Source: Octopus bimaculoides (taxonomy: Eukaryota). Taken from it: a stretch of 38,885 nucleotides of DNA. This document shows, piece after piece, positions 6,052-35,300 of this stretch. Location of the stretch: assembly GCF_001194135.2 (NCBI RefSeq), contig NC_068982.1:64037956-64076840 (forward strand), read 5' to 3'. Under the pieces are notes generated by a model that had not been told where the DNA came from, ran no database searches, and saw nothing but the letters and a program-made list of their open reading frames with translations. Positions within the stretch are counted from its first letter, which is position 1, and each line of letters begins with the position of its first letter. Both the position numbers and the translations under genes were made by a program.

Positions 6052-8714
6052 GTTAGTTATTATGTGACTACGAATATTCTGTATCTTTTGTGACTGAATG
6101 TTTATAAAATTATGATAAGAAAGACTGTCTAATATTCGTTAAATCTAAAATAAACTTTAAAATGTATGTATTTAATAATCATTGTGAATATATATTTATT
6201 GGCATGATATTTGTTATTGTCTTCGACAAATTCATGCTCTTCTTGTTAAACCGTATCACTTTATTAAGATTAATCATTTTAATTGGTAGAGATTGCGGAA
6301 TCTGAAACACTACATGGCTCAATTATTGAACAAAAAAATTAATTTCAACTATACAATACTCTATATTACCGATACGTTGAAATTATAAAGTGAAATGTCA
6401 AATAATTTGAGTCTCATGTTTCAATATCAATAGATGATTACTCTTTACGAACCAGTTCTTAAGGATGTCTCGGGACTTCTATCTTACATGCTAGTTGTTT
6501 GTCAGTCTCCATGTGGACGTAACAATTAACCTACTTTTTCACTTGCCAACTGTGCTGTGTTTTTCTTTCTACGGAGATTACATTTAATGTCTGTGCTTGT
6601 TTTATATGCTAGACTTTATTAAATGTTCCTATCCTACTCATACTTCAGCAGTTCTGATGTTAAAGTATTATTAACGTATGTAGCAGACACAACACTTGGA
6701 TTACAGAGGCCACAGACATAGTAATAGACAGACGGAGCCTCAATAGAAAACACGAATGGAACAATAAAACCCACCACACTATGCAACAAGACGACTAAAG
6801 AAAGAATGGGAGAAAAAGTCAGACATAGTTGTTGGCACTCCGTCGCTTACGACATCGAGGGTTCCAGTTGATCCGATCAACGGAACAGCCTGCTCGTGAA
6901 ATTAACGTGCAAGTGGCTGAGCACTCCACAGACACGTGTACCCTTAACGTAGTTTCGGGGATATTCAGCGTGACACAGTGTGACAAGGCTGACCTTTTGA
7001 ATTACAGGCACAACAGAAATAGAAAGTAAGAGAAAGTTGTGGTGGAAGAGTACAGCAGGGTTCGCCACCATCCCCTGCCGGAGCCTCGTGGAGTTTTAGG
7101 TGTTTTCGCTCAATAAACACTCACAACGCCCTGTCTGGGAATCGAAACCGCGAGTCCGCTGCCCTAACCACTCGGCCATTGCGCCTCCACCAGTGAGACA
7201 TAGATACAAACGACATAATACATTTTTCCAGTTGCAAAAATCAGTTGCTCCAAATTAGTGAAAATGGGCTAAATAGTAACAGGGAAATGGCATTTTTGCC
7301 TCTATACATAGAGTAGATGATGGAATGTTTAAAGTCTTGTTTATGCTGTTACAATTTGTACTTTTGCGTCGATGTCACCAGGAACAAAACCTATTACATA
7401 TAGAGAGCTGTTGTATAATACATTTGTTTTTATTCTATACAGAAAAAAGCTTTGCAGGCCATGAGGATTGCCAAACCAGAAAGCCAAACTGTTAACACTC
7501 CACCTGTAAAACGACGTAAGTTAGCATTAAAAACTATTTTACATTTACAGCATATTTGGGCTAAATTTGATGATTCTTTGTCTCCTTTGTGCAGGAACAG
7601 CTTGATATATTGGTGCATAGTCAATGGCATTAGAGAGCATAAACATTAAGTTTGTAGTTGACAAAAAGTTAGCTGACATGGAGGACTTGAAGCCATCTGA
7701 ATATTGGAAGAAAGTTACCTGTATCGTAATGATTCACTCTAGGTATCAAAATGTTGACATCATGACTGCTGCTCAATGTTCCATGAACACTTAATGGCTG
7801 TAAGACATGATATGGACGTCATGAAAACCTAGTTCTCCAAAACAGAGATGGCCTTTGGTTGTGTCTCCAGTGAAGGTGATGTCATGCAATCTTTGAACAG
7901 GGCCTTACACTCAATTAAGAATGTGAAACTGCTGGAGACTGTGGTTAAACCCTGGCTGGAGAGGGTTTCTGCTAGTAGGCCATATGTGTGTGGCAGCAGG
8001 ATTCAGCTTCTTGCCATATCTCTGGAAAGAATCAGAATTTCTATGACTTCATCAGCCCCAATTTCTGGCCTCTTAATTCCCCAACTGTAATCTCATGGAT
8101 TATTATGTGTAGTGTGCTGTTGAGAAAGACACCAACAACACTACCTGCAGCACTAAGGCCAAGCTAGTGACCAAGGTGAAGGAGATGCTCAAAAATCTTC
8201 CCAGGGACACAGGAACATGTGCACCAGGTTCTGAGGGCTGTCTTGTGGCTGTGGTGGAAGCTGAGGGTGGCTTGTTTGAGTAAACCAGCCAGAGTCTAGT
8301 TGATTAAAAAATTTTTTTTTAGATACTTTAATTTTTGGATGGGATGTTGTGCTTTCTTTTCCTTTACTGCAAAATGTCAAATTTAGCCTGAACACTGTAT
8401 TTTCTCATATTATCAAAAGTGGGATAGCTTTGTTAAAACAATAATAATATTTAGATGTTCGATGAATTTGTTGTGAAGTAAAAGGGATTGGTTTGTTTGT
8501 TTCATAAACTGTAACTAGTCGCTACCTTTACCAGAAAACCCATACTTCAACTATGAATATTAACAGTATTCAAACACTGAAAAAAAACTTCATTTCCCTA
8601 TTCATTTTGGGAAAATTTTATAAAGAGAAAAATGTAATAAGTTATTTTTTCTCAGGAATAGTCTCTGGAGTTAAATTTTATTTTATATTCTGACAAATTC
8701 TCAAAGCTGGACAT

Positions 8715-12000: not shown

Positions 12001-15000
12001 GAAATCGACCCCAGGACTTATTCTTTGTAAGCCTAGTACTTATTCTATCGGTCTCTTTTGCCGAACCGCTAAGTGACTGGGACGTAAACACACCAGCATC
12101 GGTTGTGAAGTGATGTTGGGGGACAAACACAGACACACAAACATACATATACATTTATATATATATGACGCGTAATCACAGAGGTGTGAGTTCGAGTCCC
12201 ACAGTTAACCACCTACACGTTTTTCTGCAAAATAGGGGTAGTTTATCCTGTTCAGGCTATATTATTAGCATTATCCTGCATTTGAGAATTTAAAATCACT
12301 TTAACTTTCTAAGACATCTCAACGCTTCTAAAGCAAACTTCGTTTGTCGTAATTTGAATTTATATATATATATATATATACATATATATATACGACGGGC
12401 TTCTTTCAGTTTCCATCTACCAAATCCACTCACAAGGCTTTGGTCGGCCCGAAGCTATAGTAGAAGACACTTGCCCAAGGTGCCACACAGTGGGACTGAA
12501 CCTGGAACCATGTGGTTGGTAGTCAAGCTACTTACCACGCAGCCACTCCTGCGCCTATACTCTCCACTTCTTAGTGCAGACACTCATCAAGACTCCTACA
12601 AAATTTTGTTCTCCACTCCAGCCATACTTATGTACACATACACACCAGTGGCTTCAAACCAGTTAGTTCCTCTGTGTATCGCCATTTTTTCAATTACCCT
12701 CAAACATTATATTCCAGAATTAGACCTTCATTAATCTTTCTCTTTACAAGGACCCATTCATACTAAAGTGTCTCCTGATGACCCTGCCAGCTCCTGACCT
12801 ATTGCCTTTACTTTCAATATCTCTGAGATAGAAAGGGTCATAACAAGCCTATATCTTTCACCAGCGGTTCCACAACCTTGAGAAATCTGGCAAAAGTAGT
12901 ATTATACTTGATATCAGCAAGCCATTTAAGTTTGGCATGAGAATCTCTTAGCTAAGCTGCCTACATAATAAGCTCTTTCTGCCTCTCATGTTTTGCATTA
13001 AAAGCTTCATATCATTACCACTGCAGCATGTGCTGATGAGTCTTTCTCTCTGGTATACACTATCAACCTTCACGTGCTTAGGTATATCGTTAACAATATT
13101 CACTTCTCTGCAGATAATGTGCTCATCACTCCTCACTAGCCTTCTACACGCACAGAAGTCATCCTCATGCAACCTAGACCCTACCTCCATTAACAGGAGA
13201 TACCTCAATAATTTTCTAAAGGAACCTGAGTCTTGTCTTTTTCAACAGTAAACAGTAACAATTACATATCAAAGGTTATCTTGTTCGTCGTCCTCTGCAT
13301 ATTGTTCAACTCTAGTGCCTTGGAAACTTCCTTTTAACATCCTTAGAGTGCTACGAATGCTACACCTGCCAATTATCAATGGTCTCTCTCTTAAATTCAA
13401 TGTAGAAATGAATCACACCCTGTTGATTATCCATCCTTTTTTAAAGACATAAAACACTTCATTCCTGGCTCTGGCTCTCTAAAATGTTCAAGTGAGACCA
13501 ACAATGGAATATAGCTTCCACATGTGGAATGATGATGCTTCTTCATATGCTAACAACAGCTGGATAGCTTTCTTTGGACTGCATCCAAAAGAAGTTATCC
13601 AGCTGATTGAACAAGGACTCATCAACCCACTACAATCTCTATCTTACAGACATGCTGTCTGTAATTGTTCTAATTTGCAAAAGTTATTTATTTATGTTAG
13701 CGTAGGAAAGTGTATAAGAAAGAGTAAGCAAAAATGAAAACAAATGCAAAACCCTAAACGAGAATATTTTTTAATGATATTCTGTCAAAAACCAATTACA
13801 AATTTGATATTATCTTTTTTTTGTAGGCAATTAAGTTAAACAATGAAAACAAAGACAAACAAAGTTTTAAACGTTCAAAAAACTTTGAAAAAAAGCTCAA
13901 GGTAAGTAAAGTTCACTTGTATTTATTTTTTTGTTGTTTTTATTTTGTAATTTGAGTCCAGAAACTTGGTGAATGATTATCTGAGTACTGACATTCATTT
14001 GTTCTGATTTTACATTTAACTCATTTTACCTTGGCAATTTCATGGTCCATTCAAAATAATTGTTGCTTATTATTTTTCTATTTATATGTCAATCCAATGA
14101 CAAAGGCAAAATATAGTAAATAGTTTTTATTCAAATATTTTTGGTGTCAAAAATAATCCATTAAATCTCAAAGCTATGAGATAATGTATGGTTGATTCTA
14201 AACAATGGGAATAAATAAGCATTAGATTTGACTGAGTGGAGGCGCAATAGCCCAGTGGTTAGGGCAGCGGACTCGCGGTTTCAATTCCCAGACCGGGCGT
14301 TGTAAGTGTTTATTGAGCAAAAAACACCTAAAGCTCCACGAGGCTCCGGCAGGGGATGGTGGCGAACCCTGCTGTACTCTTTCACCACAATTTTCTCTTA
14401 CTCTTTCTTCCTGTTTCTGTTGTACCTGTAATTCAAAGGGTCAGCCTTGTCACGCTGAATCTCCCCCGAGAACTACGTTAAGGGTACACGTGTCTGTGGA
14501 GTGCTCAGCCACTTGCATGTTAATTTCACAAGCAGGCTGTTCCATTGATTGGATCAACTGGAACCCTCGACGTCGTAAGCGACAGAGTGCCAACAACAAC
14601 AGATTTGACTGAGTAATCTGAATACTGCAGGGTCAAAAGGAAGCAAGGCAATCAACATTTATTGCATGCAAAATTAGGAAGTAATTGTTACATATCTTGA
14701 CTTATACTATTTTAAATGTCTAACACACATTGGTTTTCTTTTTATGTCCTGTACCTTACCATTACCATCTCTTTCCCATCAGATAGTGTAATACCACAAG
14801 GCAGCGATTTCAATAGCTATCTTCAAGGTACTTCAGAGTAGCTATTTTGTTGGAACGCTATACTAACTCAATACTGACTACCTTTGACTTCATACTTGAG
14901 CTATCTAAGCAGGTGACTGAAACCATCCTTCGAGATATATATATGTCCACACTCTCTATAGGAGTAAAATCCAACCTTGGTAATAAATATCAGATTGGAG

Positions 15001-18000
15001 CCTGGTGTAGCCATCTGGTTCACCAATCCTCAGTCAAATTGTCCAACCCATGCAAGCATGGAAAGCGGACGTTAAACGATGATGATGATGAAATAGAAAT
15101 ATTTCTGTGTGAAAGGTTTCTATTACTTATAGTATACAAATCAATTGTTTTTACCAGAGAATTTTGCATAAAAATGAGAATGAATATACTCGAGATTTGG
15201 CTGAGTTGCTGCATCAGCACACAGACTTTAAAATGAAAATTTATTTCAGTTTTAGTTAAGTTTCAAATTACCTTAATTTTAGGGATGGATTGTCACTTAA
15301 CAGATACTGCAAAATCTTGTAACCTACATGAAAATCATTCATTCAATAATTCTTTCAAAATATTCTGTCAGTATTTATCAAATAATTATAAAATATTACT
15401 AAATACCCTAATTTTTAAAAAACTTATCTAGGATCCTGACAAAACACCAAGTACTGTTGGCTTTCAACCATTTTCTGCTACACATCCTGATAGTCAAGAG
15501 AAAGAAGAAGAAAAAGAAGTGAGTCACATTTCAAAACAATGTTCTATTGTATGTAATCTTGCAGCCAGCAAAAGCAAAATATACATGAAGTACAGAAACA
15601 TTAGTTTTCTCTTCAAATTCTTTTATAGATCACCTGTTGTATAATAGTAAGAAATAAACTGTTTCTATAAAATTCGATATTGTTTAGTATGTTATTCTGT
15701 GTTAGTCTGAGATCAGTTATTTGACTGAACATAACAAATATGCCATCTTATAGCTTCTTTGGGAGCATAGGATGACGTCCATGTTAATCTTGTTTGAACT
15801 TCATTGCTCTAGGTATTGTTGACTTTGTATTATGAAAACTTTAATCTCTTAAACATATTAAGAAATTTGAATCAAGTGATTACTTAAACATTCTCTTGTT
15901 GCTTCTCAGAATTGTATATCACTATTCTAAAAGTTGAAAAACAAGTTATTAAACCCTACTATTGTTTGTGTATTACATTTCATGCCAAGTTAGGGTATAA
16001 ACATTATTTCAATTGTTCTGACTTCAGATCCCACTCTGGTCAGCTCTGATTCTCATTTATCAGTAGTCAATGAAATAAAATACCAGTAAATTTGTTGTGG
16101 TCAATTTAATTGACCTCCTCCAAACACACACATTTTACCCATATTAGAAGTTAATATAAAAAAAAATGAATTTAACAAAGATTTTTACTTTTTAATTTTC
16201 ACTAACTTCAGCACTGTAATAGCATCTTTAAAAAATGCTTCTTTATCTACATTCCTCCAGGTTGTAAAACCTCGACGAAAAGGACTTTCTGAAAGTTTTG
16301 TAATGGAAGGTGGCATGAGAGACACAAGTTAGTATATTCTCATTTTATAATTGAATTTGGTTTTATCTTTTGTGTGCTGTTTAAATGATTATGTAGGCTA
16401 AATTGAAAGCACCAGCTTTTTAATTTAGCATGGTTTGTGTGTAAAATTCACATGATTTAGGGATTTTGAACATGAGGAACTCTTGTCAGATGTTTGAATT
16501 GATATCTTATTAACTCTGTTTGATAAAGACATCATCTCACATTGAAAAAGCTGGGCTCTACCAAGCTTGCCAAAAATAGTTATAATTGCAACATTATTTT
16601 GCTATAAGACATTTAGACTGTATTTTGTGCTGAGAACCTTTTGTAACAAAAGTGCTAGCCAGTATATAAACTTCATACAGACACAAATGTCTAACATTTG
16701 CTATCATAATCCTACTTTCAGTGCTAAACTTATTTCCTCTTTTTCTTTTTCAGGGTATGATCGTGATAGAGAAGAACGATCGGATAACCCAAGGAAAGGT
16801 AACACAATATATGTTTATGGTCACAAAGTTACAGAAGAATTGCTGCGGAAGGCATTTGAAAATATTGGTCCTATTGTAAATGTAACGATGGAACTAGAAA
16901 GAAAGTAGGTTTTTGAATACTCTTAATCTTAATTTGTTGTATTCACATTCTAAATCGAAAATACATTAAAGAACATAATTTCCCAGGTTTACAAACATTT
17001 ATGTAATATTGAAATCATAAAATACTAAGTTATTGACTTACTGTTCATTACATCTAGTTTATAGTATTGTATAGATAACTGTATTTGGTCTATTCTGAGA
17101 CAACAGTATCATTGACACTAGATGAAATATTGCTTGGCTTTAATAAACGGATTTAGACCAAAAAATATGATATTAGTACTCATGCAAACGATTACATTTG
17201 CAAACACAGCCCTTTCATATCAAATTTGAACAACTTTACTCTTAGAAATCTGTTTAAGAAAAAAATCGTAAAATACATAAATGAACTAATATAATTAAAT
17301 ATTTGCCCACACCTACTAAATATATCATTTTATGTCAATAAACATTTGATGTAGCAGCTTATGCTTGGCATAACCCAAACTGCACTTCATCTTGGCTATT
17401 TCTCTTCCTAATCAATTGTGATATAACTCTTTCAGTAATTTTCGTAACCTGGTTCAACTTAGTGCTTTTTTAAATTCCCTCTCTTATGCATATTTGCTGT
17501 TATAGTAGTTAATGATGATGACACCACTATGCTAATCATTGTGTGGAGGCGCAATGGCCCAGTGGTTAGGGCAGCGAACTCGCGGTTTCAATTCCCAGAC
17601 CGGGCATTGTGAGTGTTTATTGAGCAAAAACACCTAAAGCTCCACGAGGCTCTGGCAGAGGATGGTGGCGAACCCTGCTGTACTCATCCACCACAACTTT
17701 CTCTCACTCTTCCTTCCTGTTTCTGTTGTGCCTGTATTTCAAAGGGTCAGCCTTGTCACACAGTGTCACGCTGAATATCTCCGAGAACTACGTTAAGGGT
17801 AGACCTGTCTGTGGAGTGCTCAGCCATTTGCACGTTAATTTCACGAGCAGGCTGTTCTGTTGATCGGATCAACTGGAACCCTCGACATCGTAAGCGATGG
17901 AGTGCCAACAACAACAAAGCTAATCATTGTGTATGACACCTTCCTATACTGAGTGACATTCAATTGTTCACCTGCCTTCCTTGTTGCCATGTACTTTACA

Positions 18001-20877
18001 GCTAGTCTCTCTGTTGAGTTTACTTGGAGTTGGTTTCTTTTCTATCCCATGCATTCTAATTATTCATCATCCTCTCATAATAGCAATTCTATACTTCCCT
18101 TTATTCTATCATATGTAAGGATAGGTTCATTGCTACCATTCCTTACATGTTTCTCTCAACATCTTGATTTTTCTCTAGCAGCTTCAATGTAGGACACCTC
18201 AGTGGCAGACATTTTACTTCTTTCCCTTTGGGAAAGCAGTTAAGTAAGAGGTCTTTTCATGATGAACATTTATATATATATGCATGAGAAAGCGAAAGCG
18301 AAACCGTCAATGGCACCTGTGCCCAGCATCGCCTTCCTGGCACTTGTGTCAGATGGCACATGTAAAGACATTCAAGCGAGATCGTTGCCAGTGCCACTGA
18401 ACTGGCTCCTATGCAGGTGGCACGTAAAATACACCATTTTGAGCCTGACTGGCCTTCGTGCCGGTGGCACGTAAAAACACCCACTACACTCTCAGAGTGG
18501 TTGGCGTTAGGAAGGGCATCCAGTTGTAGAAACTCTGTCAAATCAGATTGGAGCTTGGTGTAGCCATCTGGTTTCACCAATCCTCAGTCAAATCGTCCAA
18601 CCCATGCTAGCATGGAAAGCGGACGTTAAATGACGATGATGATATATATATATATTCATTTCTTTTTATTGATACCCACCATCTCTTGCTCATTTTTCTG
18701 CATGTGTGCAAAATAATGATTTTCCTAAATATCTTTTCAGTCATCAATTATTTCTTTCTTTGCACACATTAAATTTCTTATTTACTTTTATAATTATTAA
18801 CATTTTTGCTTTCACAACATTTCAAAAAGAATATCTATTTTCCATCACTAATTTGTCAGTCAATCAGTATAATGTTATTTATTCATGTGAAATTGCCAAA
18901 ACAATGTAAAATGGGTAATGCACAAAACTGAAATTACTTCAAGTATTTTGAACCAGACAATCAATAAGAAGAATTACAAAGGCTTGTGCAAAGGAATCTT
19001 CAGGAAAAACGCTTACGAGTCATCCTTCACACATTCTTGTGTTGTTGTTGTTGTTGTTGGCACTCTATCGCGGGTTCCAGTTGATCCGATCAACGGAACA
19101 GCCTGCTCGTGAAATTAACGTGCAAGTGGTTGAGCACTCCACAGACACGTGTACCCTTAACGTAGTTCTCGGGGATATTCAGCATGACACAGTGTGACAG
19201 GGCTGACCCTTTGAATTACAGGCACAACAGAAACAGGAAGTAAGAGTGAGAGAAAGTTGTGGTGAAAGAGTACAGCAGGGTTCGCCACCATCCCCTGCCG
19301 GAACCTCGTGGAGCTTTAGGTGTTTTCATTCAATAAACACTCACAACGCCTGGTCTGTGAATCGAAACCTCGAGTCCACTGCCCTAACCACTGGGCCATT
19401 GCGCCTCCACTCACACATGCACACACCAACAAAAGAAACACCACAATATAGCTCACATGTGAAGATTGAGAGATCAAAACACTGACTACAGCATTAAGTG
19501 GAGGGTTCTCAAAACAGCAAAGCCATATATAAATGCCTTGAGGAAATGTAGTTTTACATACCCTGTTTAAAACGAGTTCTGATAAATATCTAAATACAAC
19601 AAAGGAGATATTCACCTGGTGTATCATGCAAATAAATTCATCATGTCTTACTGGAAAATACCACCACATAGATCTGGCTGGGCATGTCATACATTTTATA
19701 TTTTTTTACAATACTTGTACTAACACTTCTATAAACTTTCATCTCACAATTTTCTTCCAGTTGTGCTTGAACATACACCAGCACACTTCCGATATGAACC
19801 TTCATAAATACTCCATCTTATTAAAAAATATTACAGACACTATCAAGAAGTAACTTCAACTTTTTTAATAATCCAGTGGACTCAACCTCAATCTCTGTAG
19901 ATCTGAGTTAGCATGCCTACTACAATACTTACTTTTATTTGCGGCTACTGTTTTCTCATGCATTATCACTGGCCATTATGAGGTATGTAGTGAGACAGCC
20001 AGATGATTGCAATAAGCAGAGATGTTCTAATTTTATATCAAATCAACCAAATATCTTCAGGAAACTTAAATTGCTTTTCAAAACTTTTAAGTTACTGTAT
20101 ATAAGACACATACACAAATATGTTTATTTTGTCTAATTTTTATTTTTTATTTTGGTAGTTGTGGTTTTGTTACTTTTGAAAAAGTTGAATTTGCTGAGCA
20201 AGCTATTGCTATGGTATGTATATACTAATTTTAAATAATGTTTGTGGGAGGTATTTTTAAATAAAATAGAAACATAGATTGTAAACAAATTAAAACCTTA
20301 TGACATTGACTGCAATGTGATTTTTAGATTATTTATGAATGTTTATTTCATGAGTAATGGATAAATAACACTCATCCCAACTTTCTTTGCTATTGTATTC
20401 AGGTAAATGGCTGTATGATATCCGATGTTCAGTTAAAAGTATCTATGGCAAGGCGACAACCTTCTTTTAATCAACCTCAGGAGCAAGCTTCATCACAATC
20501 ACCATCATGGGGAACAATAGGTAAACTTTTAATGTCAAAATATATATTCATTTATCGACAAAATTCAGTCAAATGGCTGATGAAATGCTTTGCAGTATTG
20601 GTTACTTCCCTTTACACTTTCTTCAAATTCCGCTGGCATCATCTTAGCTTATCATCTTCCTGGAGTTTATACTCTTTTACTTGTTTCAGTCATTTGACTT
20701 TGGCCATGCTGGAGCACCGCCTTTAGTCGAGCAAATCGACCCCAGGACTTATTCTTTGGAGGCCTAGTACTTATTCTATCGGTTTCTTTTGCTGAACCGC
20801 TAAGTTATGAGGACGTAAACACCCCAGCATCGGTTGTCAGGCGATGTTGGGAGACAAACACAGACACACAAACATAT

Positions 20878-20908
<31 letters not shown>

Positions 20909-23835
20909 CGATGGGCTTCTTTTCAGTTTTCGTCTACCAAATTCACTCACAAGGCTTTGGTCGGCCCAAGGCTATAGTAGAAGACACTTGCCCAAGGTGC
21001 CACGCAGTGGGACTGAACCCAGAACCATGTGGTTTGTAAGCAAGCTACTTACCACACAGCCACTCCTACGCCTGATAAAGTATTGTAACAGTTAGGTTCT
21101 GGGCTTAATTAAATCAGCTTACCTCTCCCATGAAATTTCTGCTTTTAAAATTATGATCCCTAAAAAAGATATTCATGTCACCATTCCCATTTCTCTTCCC
21201 CTAAAGTCAGTTTAGGACTTAAGTATTTTGATTAAATACAAGGGTTCTCAAACGTTTTCTTTCTGTGTACCCCTTCATCATATCTGACAGTATTGGCATA
21301 CTCTGTGTGAAGAATATGTAAAACAGTTGGATACATTTCAGGTCATCTCATAAGTTTTGTCCGAATTTTAAATAAAGAAAACAAGTGATCAAATGTTATA
21401 TTTACTTGAAATCTAATCATCAATGTACTTTCCCTGATTGTCTATGACTTCTTTCCGTCTATCTACAAGCTTTTTAATCCCATCAATGTAAAACTCTTTT
21501 GGTTTCAAAGCGAAGAACTCTGAAATGTCAGTTTCGACCTCCTCCTGGCTTGCGAAAGTTGTCCCCTAAATGATTCTGTAATCAACGAAACAAATGGTAG
21601 TCTGAAGGAGCAAGGTCAAGAGAATAAGGTGGATGAGGAATTTTTTCCCAACTAAGCTCTTCGATCTTCTATGACGTGATCTTTGCAGTGTGGGGTCGCG
21701 CATTGCCCTGATGAAACATCACTCCTTTTCGATTCACTAAAGTGGGTTTTTTTTTCTTCAAAGCTTGATTCAAACGCTCTAATTGCTGACAGTAGACCTG
21801 AGCATTGACTGTTGCATTATGTGGTAACAATTCAAAGTGAATTATACCTTTGCAGTCCCACCAGATAGAGAGAGGAACCTTTTTTCCATGAAGTTCCCTT
21901 CTTGGTTGTGGTTGAGCTTTTTCTATTTTATCATGCCACTTTCTGACGTTTAACATTTCGATAGAAGATCCATTTTTCGTCACCAGTCACAAGTCTGAAA
22001 AGGGTGAAATGAGTTCGCGAGAACAAAGAGAAGAGTAGATGTCAACTCGGGATTTGCAGTTGCTTTCGGACAATTCATGAGGCACCCATTTTCCAAGTTT
22101 AGGAACCTTTCCAAGTTGTTGAAGATGACGATGAACAGTTGTATAGTTTGAACTAAGCTTTATTGCCAATTCTTCAACTGATAATGCAGGATTTTCTTCA
22201 AGTAATGCCTCAAGGAGTTTATCATCAAATTCAACTGGACGTCCTGNNNNNNNNNNNNNNNNNNNNNNNNNNNNNNNNNNNNNNNNNNNNNNNNNNNNNN
22301 NNNNNNNNNNNNNNNNNNNNNNNNNNNNNNNNNNNNNNNNNNNNNNNNNNNNNNNNNNNNNNNNNNNNNNNNNNNNNNNNNNNNNNNNNNNNNNNNNNNN
22401 NNNNNNNNNNNNNNNNNNNNNNNNNNNNNNNNNNNNNNNNNNNNNNNNNNNNNNNNNNNNNNNNNNNNNNNNNNNNNNNNNNNNNNNNNNNNNNNNNNNN
22501 NNNNNNNNNNNNNNNNNNNNNNNNNNNNNNNNNNNNNNNNNNNNATGTATACAAATGCAAATAAAATAATCTTTAATTCCATTAGACATTCTAAAATACT
22601 ATTAAATTTCATTCAATTTTAAAAAAGGTAAAATCGGACAGAACTTATGGGATGACCTGATAGATATGCATTCTTTATTTTTAATTTAGTTTCACATCCT
22701 ACCATGATAAACTTTCCTGCGTTTATAAAGTACCAACAAACTCAGTTGACATTCATCATCATCATCGTTTAACGTCCGCTTTCAATGCTAGCATGGGTTG
22801 GACGATTTGACTGAAGACTGGTGAAACCAGATGGCTACACCAAGCTCCAATCTGATTTGGCAGAGTTTCTACAGCTGGATGCCCTTCCTAACGCCAACCA
22901 CTCCGAGAGTGTAGTAGGTGCTTTTACGTGCCACCGGCATGAAGGCCAGTTAAGCAGTACTCTTGCACAAAATTTGTTTCTGATTGAAACATTGCTGGAG
23001 AACAGAAAAAGCTCACCACACATTTTCTATATATACAAGTTATGTTTAGTTAGTTGTGATTACTTTAAAATGCCACTGTTTTTACAACCTTTATGTCAAT
23101 GAAGTATGATAATTATCATTCAGTCAATTAAGGAATAAGACGTCAGTTAACAAATAACTTTTTATTTTTCGTATTGTGCATTGCATGTGACCTGTTAATG
23201 TTGATTTTGACCAAAAGCAAAGTACTCACAGTATTCTGGTTTGAATAAGGTAGGAATGTAAAGGTTGCTGTGATAAAAACATGATTGAAATATTAAACAA
23301 AGAACGTAGGTTAGCTAAGCTCTGGTTCTTGAACTTTTAACTAACCAGCTAGCTTATAAATTAAGACTTGGTCAAAGCATTTCAATTCAGTTCTGTGCTC
23401 TTTGGCATCCTGGTAGTCAGAGAAAGATAGAGATCGCATCCACACAGCCACTGGAATATATACACCTAATAGGCATGCACTATCACGCCACCTAGTGGGA
23501 CTTGTAAATCGGATGTTGACATAAGAATCTGGTACACCGCAGAAACTAGAGAAGGGACGTAATTCAGCTGAAATCCCCTATACTACGGTGAACTACTACA
23601 TCAATTTCTCGTGTACTTCTGAAGTACACAAAAGATACAGTACCACTTTGTTTCCTTTTATTTATTCTAGTTATTAATAAAATGAAAAAAATGTAATGAT
23701 TTTAATTATATCTGCAAAATTGATCAATAAATTAAACTTCGCATTTTATTTGTTCTTTCAGCTGCAAGTTCCACAGTGTCACTAGCCAACTATAAAGAAA
23801 AAAGAGGACTTGTTTCCTATGAAGATCTCTTCTAA
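5977..23835 (+). CDS. NELFE: Negative elongation factor E (RD RNA-binding protein), complete spliced CDS of 10 exons, 831 nt / 276 aa
   Basis: join(5977-6051,7443-7515,9682-9737,13827-13901,15432-15518,16261-16327,16754-16904,20159-20213,20403-20520,23762-23835). All introns are GT-AG with consistent phases. The N-terminus MINFPSALTDEEEFLKQKYAKLRKKKKAL, the FKRSK..EKKLKDP segment, the RRM (RKGNTIYVYG, CGFVTFEK, LKVSMARRQP) and the C-terminal KRGLVSYEDLF match the NELF-E family as I know it. Confidence 0.95.
6829..7190 (-). mobile_element. tRNA-derived SINE, family B (CAA tail), copy 1
   Basis: A box tggccgagtggttag, B box ggtttcgattccc; TSD agt(c/g)agacatag at 6817-6828 and 7192-7203. Confidence 0.88.
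7443..7515 (+). CDS. NELFE: NELFE coding exon 2 (KKALQAMRIAKPESQTVNTPPVKR)
   Basis: Acceptor tctatacAG at 7441-7442, donor GTAAGT at 7516, phase 1. Confidence 0.9.
7548..8397 (+). mobile_element. Internally deleted Tc1/mariner-superfamily DNA transposon
   Basis: TA on both flanks; degenerate TIRs share cag...ggctaaatttga. An N-terminal remnant (MEDLKPSEYWKK..., ATG 7678) is fused to DDE remnants (AFGCVSSEGDVM, LETVVKPW, WQQDSA, FWP.NSP..N.MDYYV, VVEAEGGLFE*). Confidence 0.8.
8716..8783. repeat. (CA)n microsatellite, about 34 units
   Basis: Direct reading. Shorter CA/TA tracts lie at about 376-455, 9043-9087, 12357-12391 and 38584-38620. Confidence 0.95.
8872..9254 (-). mobile_element. tRNA-derived SINE family A
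   Basis: Head ggagtggctgtgtgctaag...ggttcaatccc on the minus strand, central microsatellite, tail ending gactgaaacaagtaaaaga. Confidence 0.88.
9682..9737 (+). CDS. NELFE: NELFE coding exon 3 (PSESSADALEHAKRLLKSG)
   Basis: Acceptor ttttcAG at 9680-9681, with an in-frame alternative AG 6 nt downstream. Donor GTAAGA at 9738. Confidence 0.88.
9980..10160 (+). mobile_element. Possible CR1/L2-like RT scrap
   Basis: Frameshifted KA.D.A*, WIDS.S and PQGSV remnants only. Confidence 0.35.
10296..10650 (-). mobile_element. tRNA-derived SINE of a third family, ending in taccttt-like repeats
   Basis: Minus strand: tggctcagtggttagag (A box), gagttcaactcc (B box), gtgttcttgagcaagacact core, tail ggggtctttaccctttacc. 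Confidence 0.78.
11305..11830 (-). mobile_element. RTE-clade LINE 3' end (RT C-terminus plus (GAT)n tail), decayed
   Basis: LKVKIFRTLTEPVLFYGSDTWTLSALLEKQLDGTYTNLLRKIQNISW...LQFADHC...LLLWHP...RKLTFP.TI..DSGL...AMQDHVVWK. Confidence 0.8.
11931..12558 (-). mobile_element. SINE family A, interrupted at its microsatellite by about 190 bp of other sequence
   Basis: Tail half at 11931-12168, head half at about 12356-12558. Confidence 0.82.
12660..13720 (+). mobile_element. CR1/L2-like LINE reverse-transcriptase remnant, heavily decayed
   Basis: Remnants LKHYIPEL, S*PIAFT, LDISKPF..WHENLLAKLP, IHFSADN (YADD position), VQVRPTMEY..HMW and LQSLSYRHAV. Confidence 0.65.
13827..13901 (+). CDS. NELFE: NELFE coding exon 4 (AIKLNNENKDKQSFKRSKNFEKKLK)
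   Basis: Acceptor ttttgtAG, donor GTAAGT at 13902, phase 0-0. Confidence 0.92.
14238..14600 (+). mobile_element. tRNA-derived SINE, family B, copy 2
   Basis: Perfect 14-bp TSD agatttgactgagt at 14224-14237 and 14601-14614; (caa)n tail. Confidence 0.92.
14985..15090 (+). mobile_element. RTE-type 3' tail fragment (family C)
   Basis: atcagattggagcctggtgtagcc...ccaacccatgcaagcatggaaagcggacgttaaacgatgatgatgatg. Confidence 0.8.
15432..15518 (+). CDS. NELFE: NELFE coding exon 5 (DPDKTPSTVGFQPFSATHPDSQEKEEEKE)
   Basis: Acceptor atctAG, donor GTGAGT at 15519; contains the FQPF motif. Confidence 0.9.
16261..16327 (+). CDS. NELFE: NELFE coding exon 6 (VVKPRRKGLSESFVMEGGMRDT)
   Basis: Acceptor cctccAG, donor GTTAGT at 16328; P.RK.L.ESFV motif. 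Confidence 0.9.
16754..16904 (+). CDS. NELFE: NELFE coding exon 7 (short RD stretch and first half of the RRM)
   Basis: RYDRDREERSDNPRKGNTIYVYGHKVTEELLRKAFENIGPIVNVTMELER; acceptor tttcAG, donor GTAGGT at 16905. Confidence 0.95.
17545..17918 (+). mobile_element. tRNA-derived SINE, family B, copy 3
   Basis: Perfect 14-bp TSD gctaatcattgtgt at 17531-17544 and 17919-17932. Confidence 0.92.
17935..18240 (-). mobile_element. Decayed RTE LINE fragment
   Basis: RENQDV...VRNG...YYERMMN..NAWD, homologous to the region at and following the end of the RTE fragment at 1-372. Confidence 0.45.
18305..18643 (+). mobile_element. RTE 3'UTR / RTE-tailed SINE (family C)
   Basis: ggcgttaggaagggcatccag...ggacgttaaatgacgatgatga. 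Confidence 0.85.
18910..19680 (+). mobile_element. Penelope-like element, GIY-YIG endonuclease / C-terminal remnant, split by a SINE
   Basis: Before the SINE: VMHKTEIT...KNYKGLCKGIFRK..SSFTH. After it: AHM*RLRDQNTDYSIKWRVLKTAKPY...RKC...YLNTTKEIF..C..ANKF. Confidence 0.6.
19035..19410 (-). mobile_element. tRNA-derived SINE, family B, copy 4, nested in a Penelope-like remnant
   Basis: (gtt)n tail; probable TSD tcacacat at 19027-19034 and 19411-19418. Confidence 0.88.
20159..20213 (+). CDS. NELFE: NELFE coding exon 8 (RNP1: NCGFVTFEKVEFAEQAIAM)
   Basis: 55 nt, phase 2 to phase 0, donor GTATGT at 20214. Confidence 0.93.
20403..20520 (+). CDS. NELFE: NELFE coding exon 9 (VNGCMISDVQLKVSMARRQP...SWGTI)
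   Basis: Acceptor tattcAG, donor GTAAAC at 20521. Confidence 0.93.
20669..21073 (-). mobile_element. tRNA-derived SINE family A, full length
   Basis: Complete head, microsatellite and tail. Confidence 0.9.
21338..22660 (-). mobile_element. Mariner (DD34D) element, ~1.3 kb, defective, spans an N-gap, antisense in the last NELFE intron
   Basis: TIRs tcaggtcatctcataagttttgtccgaattt and tcaggtcatcccataagttctgtccgatttt (28/31); TA at 22661. Motifs WVPHEL, VTGDEKW, HQGNARPH, HPPYSLDLAPSDYHLF, with frameshifts and stops. Confidence 0.92.
22753..22950 (-). mobile_element. RTE 3'UTR / RTE-tailed SINE (family C)
   Basis: (cat)n followed by cgtttaacgtccgc...gatgcccttcctaacgcc. Confidence 0.85.
23762..23835 (+). 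CDS. NELFE: NELFE last coding exon (AASSTVSLANYKEKRGLVSYEDLF*)
   Basis: Acceptor ttctttcAG, TAA at 23833-23835, followed by AATAAA at 23843, 23868 and 23929. Confidence 0.88.
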
Positions 23836-29331: not shown

Positions 29332-32300
29332 CATAAAAGGAAATTTAAAATAAATGCAAATGAAGTGTATGGAATATGAAAATTTACCGAGAGAACTGAT
29401 GTCAGCCAACATAAAGAATCCACCTTCTGGAATGGTTGGTTGCATACCAAGATCAAGTAATACATCTGCTAAAGCATCACGTTTCCTTGTAATTTCAAGA
29501 GGTAGTGACTGAAAATAGGACTTGGGTGTGTTTAAATGCTGTAGTTCCTTCTCAAAAGCTATTGCCACAGCTTCCTAAAAAAAAGATAAAAGTAGAAAAA
29601 TCTCAGAATGGTTTGAAGAAGTATACATATATAATAAGCATCTGAAGCAAGATGATCCATTTAATTTATTTCAAGTTTCAGGATTTTGTACATTCCACCT
29701 CAAATTGGGATGGCACCTGTGCCCAGCGTCGCCTAATCGGGATGGCGCCTGTGCCCAGCGTCGCCTTTCTGGCACTTGTGCCCATGACATGTGTAAGGAT
29801 TTTCAAGCGAGATTGTTGCCAGTGCCCCTGGACTGGCTCTTGTGCGGGTGGCACATGAAATACACCATTTTGAGCGTGGCCATTGCCAATACTGCCTGAC
29901 TGGCCTTTGTGTGGGTGACACGTAAAAGCACCCACTACACTCTCTGAGTGGTTGGCGTTAGGAAGGGCATCCAGCTGCAGAAACTTTGCCAAATCAGATT
30001 GGAGCCTGGCGTAACCATCTGGTTTCACCAGTCCTCAGTCAAATCGTCNNNNNNNNNNNNNNNNNNNNNNNNNNNNNNNNNNNNNNNNNNNNNNNNNNNN
30101 NNNNNNNNNNNNNNNNNNNNNNNNNNNNNNNNNNNNNNNNNNNNNNNNNNNNNNNNNNNNNNNNNNNNNNNNNNNNNNNNNNNNNNNNNNNNNNNNNNNN
30201 NNNNNNNNNNNNNNNNNNNNNNNNNNNNNNNNNNNNNNNNNNNNNNNNNNNNNNNNNNNNNNNNNNNNNNNNNNNNNNNNNNNNNNNNNNNNNNNNNNNN
30301 ATATATATACTCTTTGTACTATTAAATAAATTAATATATTTTTATGTATGCATATATGTATCTATGTTTAGTTATTTTATTTTAGTAAAGTAATCATTTT
30401 ATTATAAAATTACTTCATAATTCACTTCCACTTCCTTTTAGAATAAAACTGCAAATTTTTTTTTTCTAAATTTTATAAGTTCATATATAGGAAAACGTGG
30501 ATCATTAAAGGTTGCTGATGTATTTGTGACTGGGTCTTTACCAGTTACAGGAGGCCTTCTTTTGGATATGGTCAGGTTGTTTATGTAGCCACAATACCAT
30601 TTCAGATATAGGAGGGGCAGGAGAGAGATGATATATTATTAACAACCACTTCCACTATTTAGAAATATTAAAGCAACCAAGATATGTTCACCCTAGGTAT
30701 GTGTGTGTATGGTGGAGACTGTGGATTACAGAATGAATTTTTTTTAACTGTTTTGTTGAATGTGTATATTGTTGAGTTGGAAGTAAAACAGGCAGAAAAA
30801 CTATTCTCAGCAATAGTTTTGCTTATGGAGCCATCTTGGTTGAGGAGTGTGTGACAGAGCACTAGTGCATTGAGAGAAACGTTAGGCATAAAAGGAATTA
30901 GATGCAGTGTGCTAGTTTGGTCATGTGATGCATATGGATGAGGACATAAAGAAGTGTTGATTACCAAAAATAGATGGAAGTTGTGGAAGAAGGAACACAT
31001 GGAACAAAGTACTGAAGATCTCAAAACGTAGAGCCTTACAAAAGAGATGACAAAAGACTAAGGTATATAGTGCATTCCTGCATTCGAGATGACCCACTCA
31101 CCACAACAGAACAGAATAGAACTGATATCTTAAAACCACCTTGGTAATGCATGCCCATTAAGGGCACTGGTGGCGGCGCCACATAAAATGCACTGGTGCC
31201 AGTACCACATAGAAAGAACTGGTGCTGGTACCAAATAGAAAGCAACCAGTATACTTCATAAAGTGATTGGCATTAGGAAGGGCATCTAGCTGTAGAAACC
31301 AAGCCAAAACAGAATATGGAACCCGGTGCAACTCTTGACATTGTCATCTCCTGTCAAGCTGTCCAACCCATGCCAGCAAGGTGATGATGATGATGAAAGT
31401 TGGTAGAGATACTGTTGGCATGGAAGCAAAAGAATAGCTATAATTTGAGAGTTTGTAGGTGTGTGTTGCAAAAAGACATCTTTTGTATTTTGGATGATAG
31501 TCTTGCAGAATTTAAATCACTGGGTAACAGCTGCAGTGGAGGAGCATTTCTTCAAGGGTTACAATTCGTGTCCTTCACTTGTACTGTTGCAGCTCAGCTG
31601 TGCTTAAATTACTTGGAAGAGTTGGGGTTATTTGTATTAGTTGCATGAGGGATTTGAAGAGATATGAATAAGGTGATGCTTTTGGTCACATGTTTAGCTC
31701 TCTTGGATAGTTGGCATAAAATTGGAAGAACTCCAACATGAAGTACCATAGGGTTTAGGGAGGTGAGGACTTGATCAGACAGAGAAGTTATCAAGTTATA
31801 AAACAAATACTTCTCTTTATATAGTCTAAAATTAGCATATAAAACAGCAAAAAAATTCCTGTGATACACAGAATGTGTGCATAAGATGCTACAATAAATG
31901 ACAAATTCAGCTACAGCCATTGTATGATTTTACTAAGACAACATACAATAGTTATACACAACTAATGCTGCTTCAGTCTGAGTGATGAAAGGTTACACTA
32001 TAGTTAAACATTTTTAGTATAAAGTTCTTGCTTTGTGTGGTAAAATGGATCTAAAACAGTCAAAACAAAGATTATTATATTCATGTATTTTTCATTTTGG
32101 AAACCAAATTTTTACCGCCATAAACAAATAAATGTTATAGTTACTTGTGTAATAGTTGGTACATGATAAACACTGTTCTGGTGTACAACCATAGCAGAAG
32201 TAATAAGTTCAGCAGGTCCAATTGTCCAGCCAGTCTTCCAGCCAGTTGCACAAAATGTTTTTCCAGCACTGCCAACGGTTAGAGTTCTCTCCCACATTCC

Positions 32301-35300
32301 AGGAATTGTGGCTGATAAAATGAAATAAAAAGTAAATTTTATCAGACTTTTAATATTAATTTCTTACATCTAAGTAGAAACATAATTTAATAGGTGAGCA
32401 GTGTAACCATGTTGCTTGGTATCCCAAGAAGAATGACAGGCAAAAAAAAAACATCTACCAAATTGGAACAAAATGAAAAATTGATTTCTAACATTTGCAC
32501 TGAAAGAGAACAATCACAAAGATAAGTGGCCAAAATGGAGTTCCTTCAGAGAATAACTTCAGTAACAACACTCAACAGAGTGCACAGATTCAGAGATCAA
32601 AGAGTCATTCCAGGTCTTGCGTCTAGCCACTATTTTGCATTGAGATTGAGAAATCAATTTCAGTACTACACACGTCTGAGGAAAGAACTGTAGAGATATT
32701 TTATGGACAAGGTCAACCAACAGATCTAAGAGTAGACCACAAGGAAATGGTCAAATAATATCCTCGTCTGGTCTCACTTGGGGATCCAACTGGAACATTT
32801 GCTGACAGTTGCTTCTGATAGTGCTCTATGAAGGATGTGTCTGAGGACTCTGCTCCCACAGCCTTGACGTGAACAGTGAGCTATGAAGGTGGATGGATAA
32901 ATGGACAAACATGTGTACAGGGCCACAGATTTTGGTGGTAAGACTATTGGGAATTAAATTGCTATCATTACTTGATCGGCACTTTATATTATGTAGCATG
33001 GAAGGGTAAAAGACGAAATTGAATTTGAACTGTGAACATAAAAGACCATAATTAAATGCTGCAAAGCATTTCATTTCATGCTCCAACCATTCTATGAATT
33101 TACCAAAACAAAGAAAGAACCTGTATATGGTTGCTCGACCTGCTAGAAATAGTAGCCAAATATTTTTCAAATAACTTACCATCATAACCTATCCACATAC
33201 CTAGGGTGAACATATCTTGGTTGCTTTAATATTTCTAAATAGTGGAAGTGGTTGTTAATAATATATCATCTCTCTCCTGCCCCTCCTATATCTGAAATGG
33301 TATTGTGGCTACATAAACAACCTGACCATATCCAAAAGAAGGCCTCCTGTAACTGGTAAAGACCCAGTCACAAATACATCAGCAACCTTTAATGATCCAC
33401 GTTTTCCTATATATGAACTTATAAAATTTAGAAAAAAAAAATTTGCAGTTTTATTCTAAAAGGAAGTGGAAGTGAATTATGAAGTAATTTTATAATAAAA
33501 TGATTACTTTACTAAAATAAAATAACTAAACATAGATACATATATGCATACATAAAAATATATTNNNNNNNNNNNNNNNNNNNNNNNNNNNNNNNNNNNN
33601 NNNNNNNNNNNNNNNNNNNNNNNNNNNNNNNNNNNNNNNNNNNNNNNNNNNNNNNNNNNNNNNNNNNNNNNNNNNNNNNNNNNNNNNNNNNNNNNNNNNN
33701 NNNNNNNNNNNNNNNNNNNNNNNNNNNNNNNNNNNNNNNNNNNNNNNNNNNNNNNNNNNNNNNNNNNNNNNNNNNNNNNNNNNNNNNNNNNNNNNNNNNN
33801 NNNNNNNNNNNNNNNNNNNNNNNNNNNNTCATCATCATCATCATCATCGTTTAACGTCTGCTTTCCATGCTAGCATGGGTTGGACGATTTGACTGAGGAC
33901 TGGTGAAACCAGATGGTTACGCCAGGCTCCAATCTGATTTGGCAAAGTTTCTACAGCTGGATGCCCTTCCTAACGCCAACCACTCAGAGAGTGTAGTGGG
34001 TGCTTTTACGTGTCACCCACACGAAGGCCAGTCAGGCGGTATTGGCAATGGCCACGCTCAAAATGGTGTATTTCATGTGCCACCCGCACAAGAGCCAGTC
34101 CAGGGGCACTGGCAACGATCTCGCTCGGAAATCCTTACACATGTCATGGGCACAAGTGCCAGCAAAGGACACTTTGGACAATGCAACGTGAGACATACTA
34201 AAAAAAAAATACCATGGATGGTTACAACTACAACAGTATTTAACATAAGTTTTACTGACCAGGGCTGACTTGGGGCTAAATAAAGCAAATTTTGGTTTCA
34301 AATTTTGGCACAAGACCAGCAAGCTTCAGGGAGGGGGTAAGTTGATTACAGAGACCCCAGAACTAAACTGGTACTTATTTTATTGACTCCAAAAGAATGA
34401 AAGTCAAAGTCCACCTTGGTGGAATTTGAACTCAGAACTTAAGGACAGACAAAATGCCACTAAGTATTTTGCTTAGCATGGTAACAATTCTTCCAGCTCA
34501 CCACCCTAATAACAAATATTGCACAAAAGGGTTTACAGTGTCAATCTGGGCACAAATGTTCTTACTACCATTCTGTTGTCATACCCATCATCATCATTAC
34601 ATTCAAACACTTACCAATTTTGAGATGCTTATTTCCATCGTAAGTGAGCCATTCATAAACTTCATCAGAAATACATAATACATCATGCTTTATACATAAG
34701 GCAGCTATCATCTCCAGCTCAGATCGACTGAAAACCTAATGGGATTGTATAAAAGTAATTTAAATTCAAATCAGCAAGTCATATGCAGGTTTTATTTAAG
34801 ATAATTGCAAATAATCCAATATTGAATTTAAAAATATAATCAGTAAGATATAAAAAGATGTGAACAGAGTCAAAGCAGCTTTTGTCAAATCTATTTCAAC
34901 TGATGTTTTTGTATCATGGTATTTTATAATAACGGGTATAATATTTGCAGGATCTCATTAGAAAAAGCTTTCAAACATTTATTCAAACAGCTCTTGATGT
35001 TCATTGTATTTGCTATTTTAGTCCTACAACACTGCTTAAGGTCACAGTTGAATATGGTTTTAGAAGGTTAACCTACTTGCTGAACAGCAGTTCACAGAAT
35101 TCTTTACTAAGTATTCCATTTAAGACCATCCAGTGTTTTTTCCTGTGTGCAGAGAACCTAGAATACCATATTATCAGATGTGTTCAGGAAGACATAGCTG
35201 CTAATTCTAACCAGTGTACCTACCATGTAAGCTCACATAAATTTTGATCCAACTTTTTACAAGTACTGGTAATGTTGTTAGAGAGGAACCTATAATAAAG

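What the first reader, a model, noticed from the sequence alone, without database searches (positions are those of the whole stretch)
29765..34168. ~1 kb inverted duplication brackets the catalytic PLP-lysine exon of KYAT
Seen: 30333-30703 is the exact reverse complement of 33194-33564. Beyond two similar-sized gaps (252 and 264 N) the symmetry continues, because 29769-30048 matches 33883-34162 with only 6 transitions, 4 of them at CpG. These two repeat copies share variants absent from the other family C copies. The 2.5 kb loop holds exactly one KYAT exon, 32145-32311, which encodes GSAGK. Established: long intronic inverted repeats drive back-splicing or exon skipping and are ADAR substrates, and coleoid cephalopods edit RNA heavily. 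Inference: the stem could loop out this 167-nt frame-shifting exon, giving a circRNA plus an inactive or NMD-targeted mRNA. It could also let recombination flip the exon and create a null allele. Caveat: both arms abut gaps, so an assembly artefact is possible.
Basis: partly seen in the sequence, partly recalled or inferred. Interest (0 to 1): 0.75.

Follow-up and report, generated by a model that had tools for sequence, protein, structure and literature searches.

The report
Real inverted intron duplication around KYAT exon
A roughly 0.95 kb piece of intron was copied in reverse into the next intron of a kynurenine aminotransferase gene; the copy is real and present in every animal checked, but mature mRNA shows no change in how the enclosed catalytic exon is spliced.

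Summary

- **Copy number.** In 8 DNA samples from 4 studies, one 579-581 nt unitig covers 30301-30703 and runs 178 nt into the left gap. Its depth is 1.9-2.5x that of the single-copy loop. Both inner junctions sit at about 1x.
- **Which copy is older.** Related species B, C and E carry the arm once, at the left position.
- **Empty site.** A single-copy contig of species B joins 33196 directly to 34162. So 33194-34165 is a derived, inverted copy of 29766-30703.
- **How it formed.** The junctions show 3 nt (CAC) and 1 nt (G) of microhomology, no target-site duplication, and a likely loss of CCCC. This fits a templated insertion made by DNA repair or replication template switching, not transposition.
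- **What lies inside.** The loop holds one expressed exon, 32145-32311 on the minus strand (167 nt). It carries the PLP-binding lysine of a KYAT1/KYAT3-type aminotransferase.
- **Effect on RNA.** All 303 reads leaving the downstream exon enter this exon. None of about 610 reads on the exon shows a back-splice or an edited base.

Caveats: the RNA libraries look poly(A)-selected, so circular RNA and editing of the arms remain untested. The orientation of the loop in DNA cannot be read from short reads.

The parts
29766..30048 (+). Left arm, outer part: a 5'-truncated SINE copy. This is part of the ancestral (source) block.
   Evidence: 98% reverse-complementary to 33883-34165. It is the sister copy of the right-arm SINE in alignment A1.
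30049..30300 (.). Assembly gap inside the left arm. It should hold the SINE 3' end with its (TGA)n tail and about 178 nt of AT-rich sequence.
   Evidence: The reverse complement of 33829-33882 supplies 54 nt. The 579-581 nt unitig runs 178 nt leftwards from 30301 in 8 samples.
30301..30703 (+). Left arm, inner low-copy part (28% GC). This is the ancestral copy.
   Evidence: Unitig depth is 1.9-2.5x that of the loop. Contigs of species B, C and E cross 30703/30704 at 1x depth.
30704..33193 (.). Loop of 2,490 nt between the arms: intron sequence, SINE fragments and one exon.
   Evidence: Contiguous in the assembly. Single-copy contigs cover 31352-33163 and other parts.
32145..32311 (-). KYAT exon of 167 nt that encodes GSAGK, the PLP-binding lysine.
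   Evidence: Splice junctions 29574/32145 and 32311/34615, both CT..AC on the + strand. Translation. PDB match to KYAT3 (2zjg) at 1.5e-59.
33194..33564 (-). Right arm, inner part: the derived inverted copy of 30333-30703.
   Evidence: 100% reverse complement. Arm-matching contigs of species B, C and E all stop exactly at 33194.
33565..33828 (.). Assembly gap inside the right arm, at the same part of the repeat as the left gap.
   Evidence: The arithmetic of the known flanks gives an arm length of about 940-970 nt.
33829..34165 (-). Right arm, outer part: SINE 3' end with (TGA)n tail (33829-33882) and SINE body (33883-34165). Derived copy.
   Evidence: Absent from the species B empty site.
33194..33196 (.). 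Inner breakpoint: 3 nt of microhomology (CAC) shared by the donor end and the target.
   Evidence: The species B contig reads ...CCTATCCACCCCC directly before 34162. Comparison.
34162..34169 (.). Outer breakpoint: 1 nt of microhomology (G). An AAAGG string is shared by donor and target, offset by one base. There is no target-site duplication.
   Evidence: donor GTGCCAGAAAGGCG, product GTGCCAGCAAAGGAC, species B CCCCCGCAAAGGAC.
29386..29574 (-). Next KYAT exon downstream in the mRNA. The left boundary is approximate.
   Evidence: RNA junction. tblastn matches.
34615..34735 (-). Next KYAT exon upstream in the mRNA. The right boundary is approximate.
   Evidence: RNA junction. tblastn matches.

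Best explanation
A block of about 0.95 kb was copied once, in inverted orientation, into the next intron upstream in the gene, 2.5 kb away. The block lies in the intron downstream (in the mRNA) of the PLP-lysine exon. It consists of a 5'-truncated SINE with its tail, plus about 600 nt of adjacent low-copy, AT-rich intron (29766-30703). The copy now occupies 33194-34165.

The event happened in the lineage of this species, after it split from its sampled relatives. The allele is fixed or nearly fixed.

The junctions point to a DNA-templated insertion. The likely mechanisms are break repair or replication template switching of the MMBIR/FoSTeS or polymerase-theta type (inferred from the junctions).

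As a result, the pre-mRNA can form a duplex of about 0.95 kb, perfect over at least 581 nt, around the 167 nt catalytic exon (inferred). In the mature mRNA that could be examined, the exon is spliced in normally. The insertion therefore behaves as a neutral or nearly neutral structural change.
For: **Two real copies.** The arm unitig (579-581 nt) compared with the loop contig gives these depths: 30.4/16, 101.7/51, 185.3/85.2; 22.3/11.4; 165.2/85.4, 98.9/48.4, 127.8/51.9, 49.8/23.6. The junction unitigs 30674-30910 and 33135-33223 are present at about 1x in all 8 samples.

**Polarity.** In species B, C and E the arm is at 1x. Their contigs cross the left junction and stop exactly at 33194 on the right.

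**Empty site.** A 214 nt single-copy contig of species B aligns to 34162-34300. It is preceded by ATAAGTTACCATCATAACCTATCCACCCCC, which matches window 33171-33196.

**Junction anatomy.** CAC and G microhomology, no target-site duplication, and no tail at the copy's end.

**Sister SINE copies.**

**Normal splicing.** Junction reads number 147/59/104 and 83/70/69. All 303 reads leaving 29574 enter exon B. There are no back-splice joints and no variant letters in the exon. The exon's depth is at least that of its neighbours.

**Duplex potential.** -630 and -587 kcal/mol for the two read parts.
Against: - No read or contig spans a whole arm. The link between the SINE part and the low-copy part across each gap, and the orientation of the loop relative to the outer flanks, therefore rest on scaffolding, on the species B empty site and on sense splicing of the exon.
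- The empty site was seen in one contig of one run only. Species C and E gave no contig there.
- The SINE part shows 6 differences in 283 nt, against 0 in at least 581 nt of the low-copy part. Four of the six are CpG-type, and the two non-CpG differences are not significantly clustered (p about 0.1). Even so, mis-assembly of the high-copy SINE or gene conversion of the inner part cannot be excluded.
- An RNA-templated origin cannot be ruled out from the junctions alone.
- The RNA libraries show almost no intron signal, so they are blind to circular RNA and to editing of the arms.
Confidence: 0.78

Rival explanations
1. Assembly artefact: a single-copy contig was placed twice, in opposite orientations next to gaps, or two haplotypes were merged.
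For: Both arms abut gaps, and the identity is a suspicious 100%.
Against: The arm's depth is 1.9-2.5x that of the loop in 8 samples from 4 studies. Two different inner junctions each sit at about 1x, not 0.5x. Sister species show 1x depth, and one shows an empty site.
Confidence: 0.02
2. RNA-mediated copy: a transcript covering the SINE and its flank, or a piece of KYAT intron RNA, was reverse-transcribed into the neighbouring intron by a LINE enzyme (3' transduction or template switch).
For: The copy starts inside the SINE (5' truncated). Microhomology at a junction is also typical of 5' ends of LINE-mediated insertions (general knowledge). The copy's other end lies in a short (TG)n run at 30694-30712.
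Against: There is no target-site duplication and no poly(A) or microsatellite tail at either end. A T10 run at about 30457-30468 would stop a Pol III SINE transcript. The donor lies only 2.5 kb away in cis and is inverted, as expected for template switching.
Confidence: 0.1
3. One reading: the stem loops out the exon often enough to matter. This would give a circular RNA, a frame-shifted NMD target, heavy A-to-I editing, or exon inversion by arm-to-arm recombination.
For: Both arms lie in introns of one transcript and could form a duplex of about 0.95 kb. Intronic inverted repeats promote back-splicing in animals (Ivanov et al. 2015, cited in PMC9699675).
Against: 0 of 303 reads skip the exon. 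There is no back-splice and no edited base in about 610 exon reads. No RNA contigs hold the arms. Circular RNAs are reported as low overall in octopus (PMC9699675). The allele appears homozygous in 8 of 8 samples, which argues against a strongly harmful effect.
Confidence: 0.1

Closest known systems
Templated insertions and inverted duplications made by template switching (MMBIR/FoSTeS, fold-back or polymerase-theta repair), e.g. PMC8421209, PMC11724301, PMC3907307
   Same: The donor lies nearby in cis and the copy is inverted. Both junctions show 1-3 nt of microhomology. There is no target-site duplication. A few bases appear to be lost at the target.
   Different: At about 0.95 kb it is far longer than the 5-34 bp fold-back insertions described at yeast breaks, and far smaller than the human inverted duplications. 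It is a germline event, fixed in a wild species, and lies inside a gene's introns. The enzymes involved are unknown.
Inverted Alu-type repeat pairs in the introns flanking circularised exons
   Same: Reverse-complementary sequences sit in the two introns that flank a single exon of one transcript. Part of each arm is a SINE.
   Different: The arms come from a single duplication, not from two independent SINE insertions, and are therefore far longer and nearly perfect. No back-splice product was found, although only in poly(A)-type data.
Sex-chromosome palindromes whose arms stay identical through gene conversion
   Same: Two inverted arms with a spacer. The inner arms are identical in all samples, even on a haplotype with 8 SNPs right next to the arm.
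   Different: The scale is a thousand times smaller. Identity may simply reflect youth. Gene conversion was not shown.

Membership tests
Templated insertion by template switching (MMBIR/FoSTeS-like) | The inserted sequence is copied from a donor elsewhere in the genome, and the donor is kept | tested here: met
   33194-34165 is the inverted copy of 29766-30703. Depth is 2x, and the donor is retained.
Templated insertion by template switching (MMBIR/FoSTeS-like) | Pre-insertion (empty) site exists in a relative | tested here: met
   A species B contig joins 33196 to 34162. Seen in one contig of one run.
Templated insertion by template switching (MMBIR/FoSTeS-like) | Microhomology at both junctions and no target-site duplication | tested here: met
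   CAC (3 nt) and G (1 nt, plus an offset AAAGG). No direct repeat flanks the insert. CCCC of species B is missing.
Templated insertion by template switching (MMBIR/FoSTeS-like) | DNA rather than RNA template | not testable with these tools
   The junctions alone cannot tell the two apart. The absence of a tail and of a target-site duplication favours DNA.
Retrotransposed SINE with 3' transduction | Target-site duplication and a 3' tail at the insertion end | tested here: not met
   Neither is present at 33193/33194 or at 34165/34166.
Exon-flanking intronic inverted repeats that drive circular RNA | Complementary repeats in both flanking introns of one transcript | tested here: met
   The arms lie in the introns defined by junctions 29574/32145 and 32311/34615.
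Exon-flanking intronic inverted repeats that drive circular RNA | Back-splice junction reads (32145 joined behind 32311) | tested here: not met
   No 'goes back' joint among about 610 reads in 3 runs. The libraries appear poly(A)-selected, so this is a weak test.
ADAR-edited long dsRNA | Clusters of A-to-G changes (T-to-C on the + strand here) in the arms | not testable with these tools
   RNA depth over the low-copy arms is 0-0.4. No RNA run holds the arm's words. The SINE parts are swamped by reads from other copies.
Assembly artefact (duplicated contig) | Single-copy read depth over the repeated sequence | tested here: not met
   Depth is 1.9-2.5x in 8 samples.
Kynurenine aminotransferase (KYAT1/KYAT3, class I aminotransferase fold) | Sequence match that includes the PLP-binding lysine motif SxGK | tested here: met
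   2zjg (KYAT3) at 1.5e-59 and 3fvs (KYAT1) at 2.6e-57. GSAGKTF aligns, and K57 falls on residue 247 of KAT I. Hits carry Pfam PF00155. The best named hit is from Lottia gigantea, 65% identical.

The most novel reading that the evidence does not exclude
The near-perfect hairpin of about 0.95 kb is not inert. In tissues or RNA fractions not sampled here (neural, total, nuclear) it could produce a circular KYAT exon RNA, hairpin-derived small RNAs, or a hyper-edited intron that tunes KYAT output. Its arms could also be kept identical by arm-to-arm gene conversion, as in a miniature palindrome.
Probability: 0.12. Interest if true: 0.55.

Novelty: new member of a known kind. Interest (0 to 1): 0.3.

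Why it matters
- **For the assembly.** Two gaps that looked suspicious are explained. They sit at the same spot in two real copies of one repeat, and most of their content can be inferred.
- **For genome evolution.** This is a clean germline example of a kilobase-scale inverted templated insertion, with donor, product and empty site all in hand.
- **For RNA biology.** It offers a natural test case. A dated, nearly perfect inverted repeat flanks a single frame-shifting, catalytically essential exon, in an animal group said to edit RNA heavily and to make few circular RNAs. Relatives without the insertion serve as controls.
- **So far.** The mature mRNA looks unaffected, so the practical importance is modest.

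Tried and rejected
- **Long reads.** A search for PacBio runs returned none, so no read spans an arm.
- **RNA runs holding the arm.** None found, so editing of the arms could not be examined.
- **Skip junction on the full 5.3 kb stretch.** The joints table keeps only the 15 best-supported joints, and SINE-derived joints fill it. I replaced this with loose-end tests on single exons.
- **Polarising the six SINE differences.** I tried to use family consensus letters from mapped contigs. The family is too heterogeneous: at 29803/34128 the right arm looks derived, and the other positions are unclear.
- **Rfam scan of 29400-34700.** No family matched.
- **Literature search for the SINE sequence.** No paper found.
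- **Naming the species.** The protein search returned no protein from the organism itself.
- **Two independent SINE insertions as the outer arms.** Rejected, because the two copies share private variants and the species B empty site lacks the whole block.
- **A heterozygous structural variant.** Rejected, because the junctions sit at 1x rather than 0.5x.
Full report
**1. Observation**

- 30333-30703 and 33194-33564 are exact reverse complements (371 nt).
- 29766-30048 and 33883-34165 are 98% complementary over 283 nt.
- The six mismatches are all transitions, at 29803, 29805, 29814, 29893, 29908 and 29978. Four of them are CpG versus TpG/CpA.
- The outer parts are copies of a SINE that occurs elsewhere in the window (18310-18643, 22753-22959, 14989-15091, 31239-31381). 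The two arm copies are 97.6% alike, against 82-92% to the other copies. They share a roughly 20 nt insertion and several private variants.
- The window has four gaps. Two of them, 30049-30300 and 33565-33828, lie inside the arms.

**2. The gaps**

Both gaps fall on the same part of the repeat.
- On the right, the SINE reads 54 nt further (33829-33882: 3' end and (TGA)n tail) than on the left.
- On the left, the low-copy part reads 32 nt further (30301-30332) than on the right.
- Public DNA runs of the same species give a single unitig of 579-581 nt. It covers 30301-30703 and continues 178 nt into the left gap.
- Adding these pieces leaves about 20-54 unread bases per arm and gives an arm length of about 940-970 nt.
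- No contig crosses either gap, so continuity is inferred, not read. It is supported by the empty site described in section 4.

**3. Artefact or real**

The arm unitig was compared with the single-copy loop contig (31352-33157/33163) in eight samples from four studies.

| Sample | Arm depth | Loop depth | Ratio |
|---|---|---|---|
| X1 | 30.4 | 16 | 1.9 |
| X2 | 101.7 | 51 | 2.0 |
| X3 | 185.3 | 85.2 | 2.2 |
| X19 | 22.3 | 11.4 | 2.0 |
| X4 | 165.2 | 85.4 | 1.9 |
| X6 | 98.9 | 48.4 | 2.0 |
| X9 | 127.8 | 51.9 | 2.5 |
| X10 | 49.8 | 23.6 | 2.1 |

- The arm's inner end forks into two unitigs, 30674-30910 and 33135-33223. Each sits at about the loop's depth in every sample. The right junction is 0.77-1.19x the loop.
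- Two copies per haploid genome, homozygous, explain these numbers.
- A contig placed twice would give 1x depth over the arm.
- A heterozygous rearrangement would give 0.5x junctions.
- The artefact reading is therefore rejected.

**4. Origin**

Runs of related species were laid at lower stringency.
- In species B, C and E the arm is present at single-copy depth: 45.5 against 47.7-58.8, 46.5 against 59-63, and 4.6-5.4 against 5.6-7.2.
- Their contigs cross the left junction (30634-30940). When laid on the right arm, they stop exactly at 33194.
- Species D is the closest by identity in the loop and shows no arm at all.
- A 214 nt single-copy contig of species B aligns to 34162-34300. The 30 letters before that are ATAAGTTACCATCATAACCTATCCACCCCC, which is window 33171-33196 with one substitution, followed by CCCC.
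- Species B therefore has the empty site. The block 33197-34161 is an insertion in the lineage of the window's species, and the left block is the donor.

The breakpoints read as follows.
- **Inner end.** The donor reads ACACA|CACATACC. The target reads TATC|CAC|CCCC. That gives 3 nt of microhomology.
- **Outer end.** The donor reads GTGCCAG|AAAGGCG. The target reads CCCCC|G|CAAAGGAC. The product reads GTGCCAGCAAAGGAC. That gives 1 nt of microhomology, with an AAAGG string offset by one base.
- There is no target-site duplication, no tail, and four target bases are missing.

This is the signature of a templated insertion by template switching or break repair. PMC8421209 and PMC11724301 describe the class. 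It is not the signature of transposition.

An RNA-templated copy cannot be excluded, but it lacks its usual marks. In addition, a T10 run inside the block would stop a Pol III transcript.

**5. Age and arm identity**

- The low-copy part shows no difference in at least 581 nt. The SINE part shows 6 differences in 283 nt.
- The SINE is 51% GC with 7-11 CpG. The low-copy part is 28% GC with one CpG. The four CpG changes are therefore expected to fall in the SINE.
- Two non-CpG changes both falling in the SINE has a chance of about 0.1. The pattern fits a recent event.
- Samples X9 and X10 are homozygous for 8 SNPs between 32521 and 33175. The last of these is 19 nt from the right junction. Yet their arms remain one identical 2x unitig.
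- This may mean that gene conversion keeps the arms alike, or that a converted tract ended at the insertion. I could not decide between these.

**6. The gene**

- RNA-seq junctions 29574/32145 and 32311/34615 (CT..AC on the + strand, so GT..AG on the minus strand) define the 167 nt exon.
- The three exons together translate to a sequence that matches KYAT3 (2zjg, 1.5e-59) and KYAT1 (3fvs, 2.6e-57) over 156-158 residues without gaps.
- The lysine of GSAGK falls on residue 247 of KAT I. From my own knowledge, that is the PLP Schiff-base lysine.
- Further exons lie at about 38505-38389, 26975-26922 and 25378-25283.
- The best named relative is from the mollusc Lottia gigantea, at 65% identity.
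- I could not confirm that the organism is a cephalopod.

**7. Consequences for RNA**

Both arms lie in introns of one transcript. They could pair with -630 and -587 kcal/mol for the two read parts. This is inference.

Three raw RNA-seq runs were examined.
- The two inclusion junctions have 147/59/104 and 83/70/69 reads. The exon's depth is at least that of its neighbours.
- All 303 reads that leave exon 29386-29574 continue into 32145 (agreement 1.0). Skipping is therefore below about 1% of steady-state mRNA.
- Of about 610 reads on the exon, none goes back from 32311 to 32145. No base differs at the 1% level. All 246 reads leaving at 32311 continue into 34615.
- Intron depth is near zero, so the libraries behave as poly(A)-selected. 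Circular RNA and NMD targets would be under-represented.
- The low-copy arms have 0-0.4x RNA depth, and no RNA run's contigs hold them. Editing of the arms is therefore untested.
- A survey of octopus tissues reported low overall circular RNA levels (PMC9699675).

**8. Inversion**

With perfect inverted arms, both loop orientations give the same junction sequences. Short reads therefore cannot see a flip. What can be said is that every RNA read shows the exon in sense and spliced in.

**9. Verdict**

This is a real, recent, lineage-specific and apparently fixed inverted templated insertion. It brackets the catalytic exon of KYAT with a near-perfect inverted repeat of about 0.95 kb. Its functional proposals have no support in the data at hand and remain open only for RNA fractions that were not sampled.

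Noticed in passing
window 32521-33175: Samples X9 and X10 are homozygous for 8 SNPs clustered here: 32521, 32697, 32789, 32907, 32928, 33059, 33061 and 33175. The last lies 19 nt from the right arm. There are none in 30704-32520, and the arms are unchanged. This may be a haplotype block or a conversion tract that ends at the insertion.
   Followed up: partly
window 30480-30508 (equivalent to 33389-33417): The arm ortholog in species B and C carries 323 extra letters at this point, inside a 1251-1253 nt contig. Either they gained an insertion or the window's species lost sequence before the duplication.
   Followed up: no
window 33114-33176: A short element of about 50 nt is present in roughly thousands of copies in all five species. 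Contigs show 'goes back 33-48' joints, so it is often tandem. Unitigs of every species break here, just before the insertion site.
   Followed up: no
window 29860 and 34131 (SINE positions): RNA reads (27+26 in X43, 59+58 in X45) and one DNA contig join these two SINE positions on opposite strands. This most likely reflects a head-to-head SINE pair at another locus, not this hairpin.
   Followed up: no
window 17540-17885 and 19068-19413: A second long inverted pair (346 nt, 92%) comes from another, tRNA-like SINE family. Further copies are at 14233-14601 and 6828-7190. Inverted SINE pairs are common in this gene's introns.
   Followed up: no
window 30674-30910: In run X1 only, the left junction unitig has depth 26.6, against 13-16 for the other single-copy pieces. 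In the other seven samples it is at 1x.
   Followed up: no
window 30749 leftwards, species D (X20): The contig of species D that covers 30749-30910 continues 210 nt to the left with sequence unlike the window. No arm sequence is found in that run. Species D may have a deletion or another insertion at the donor site.
   Followed up: no
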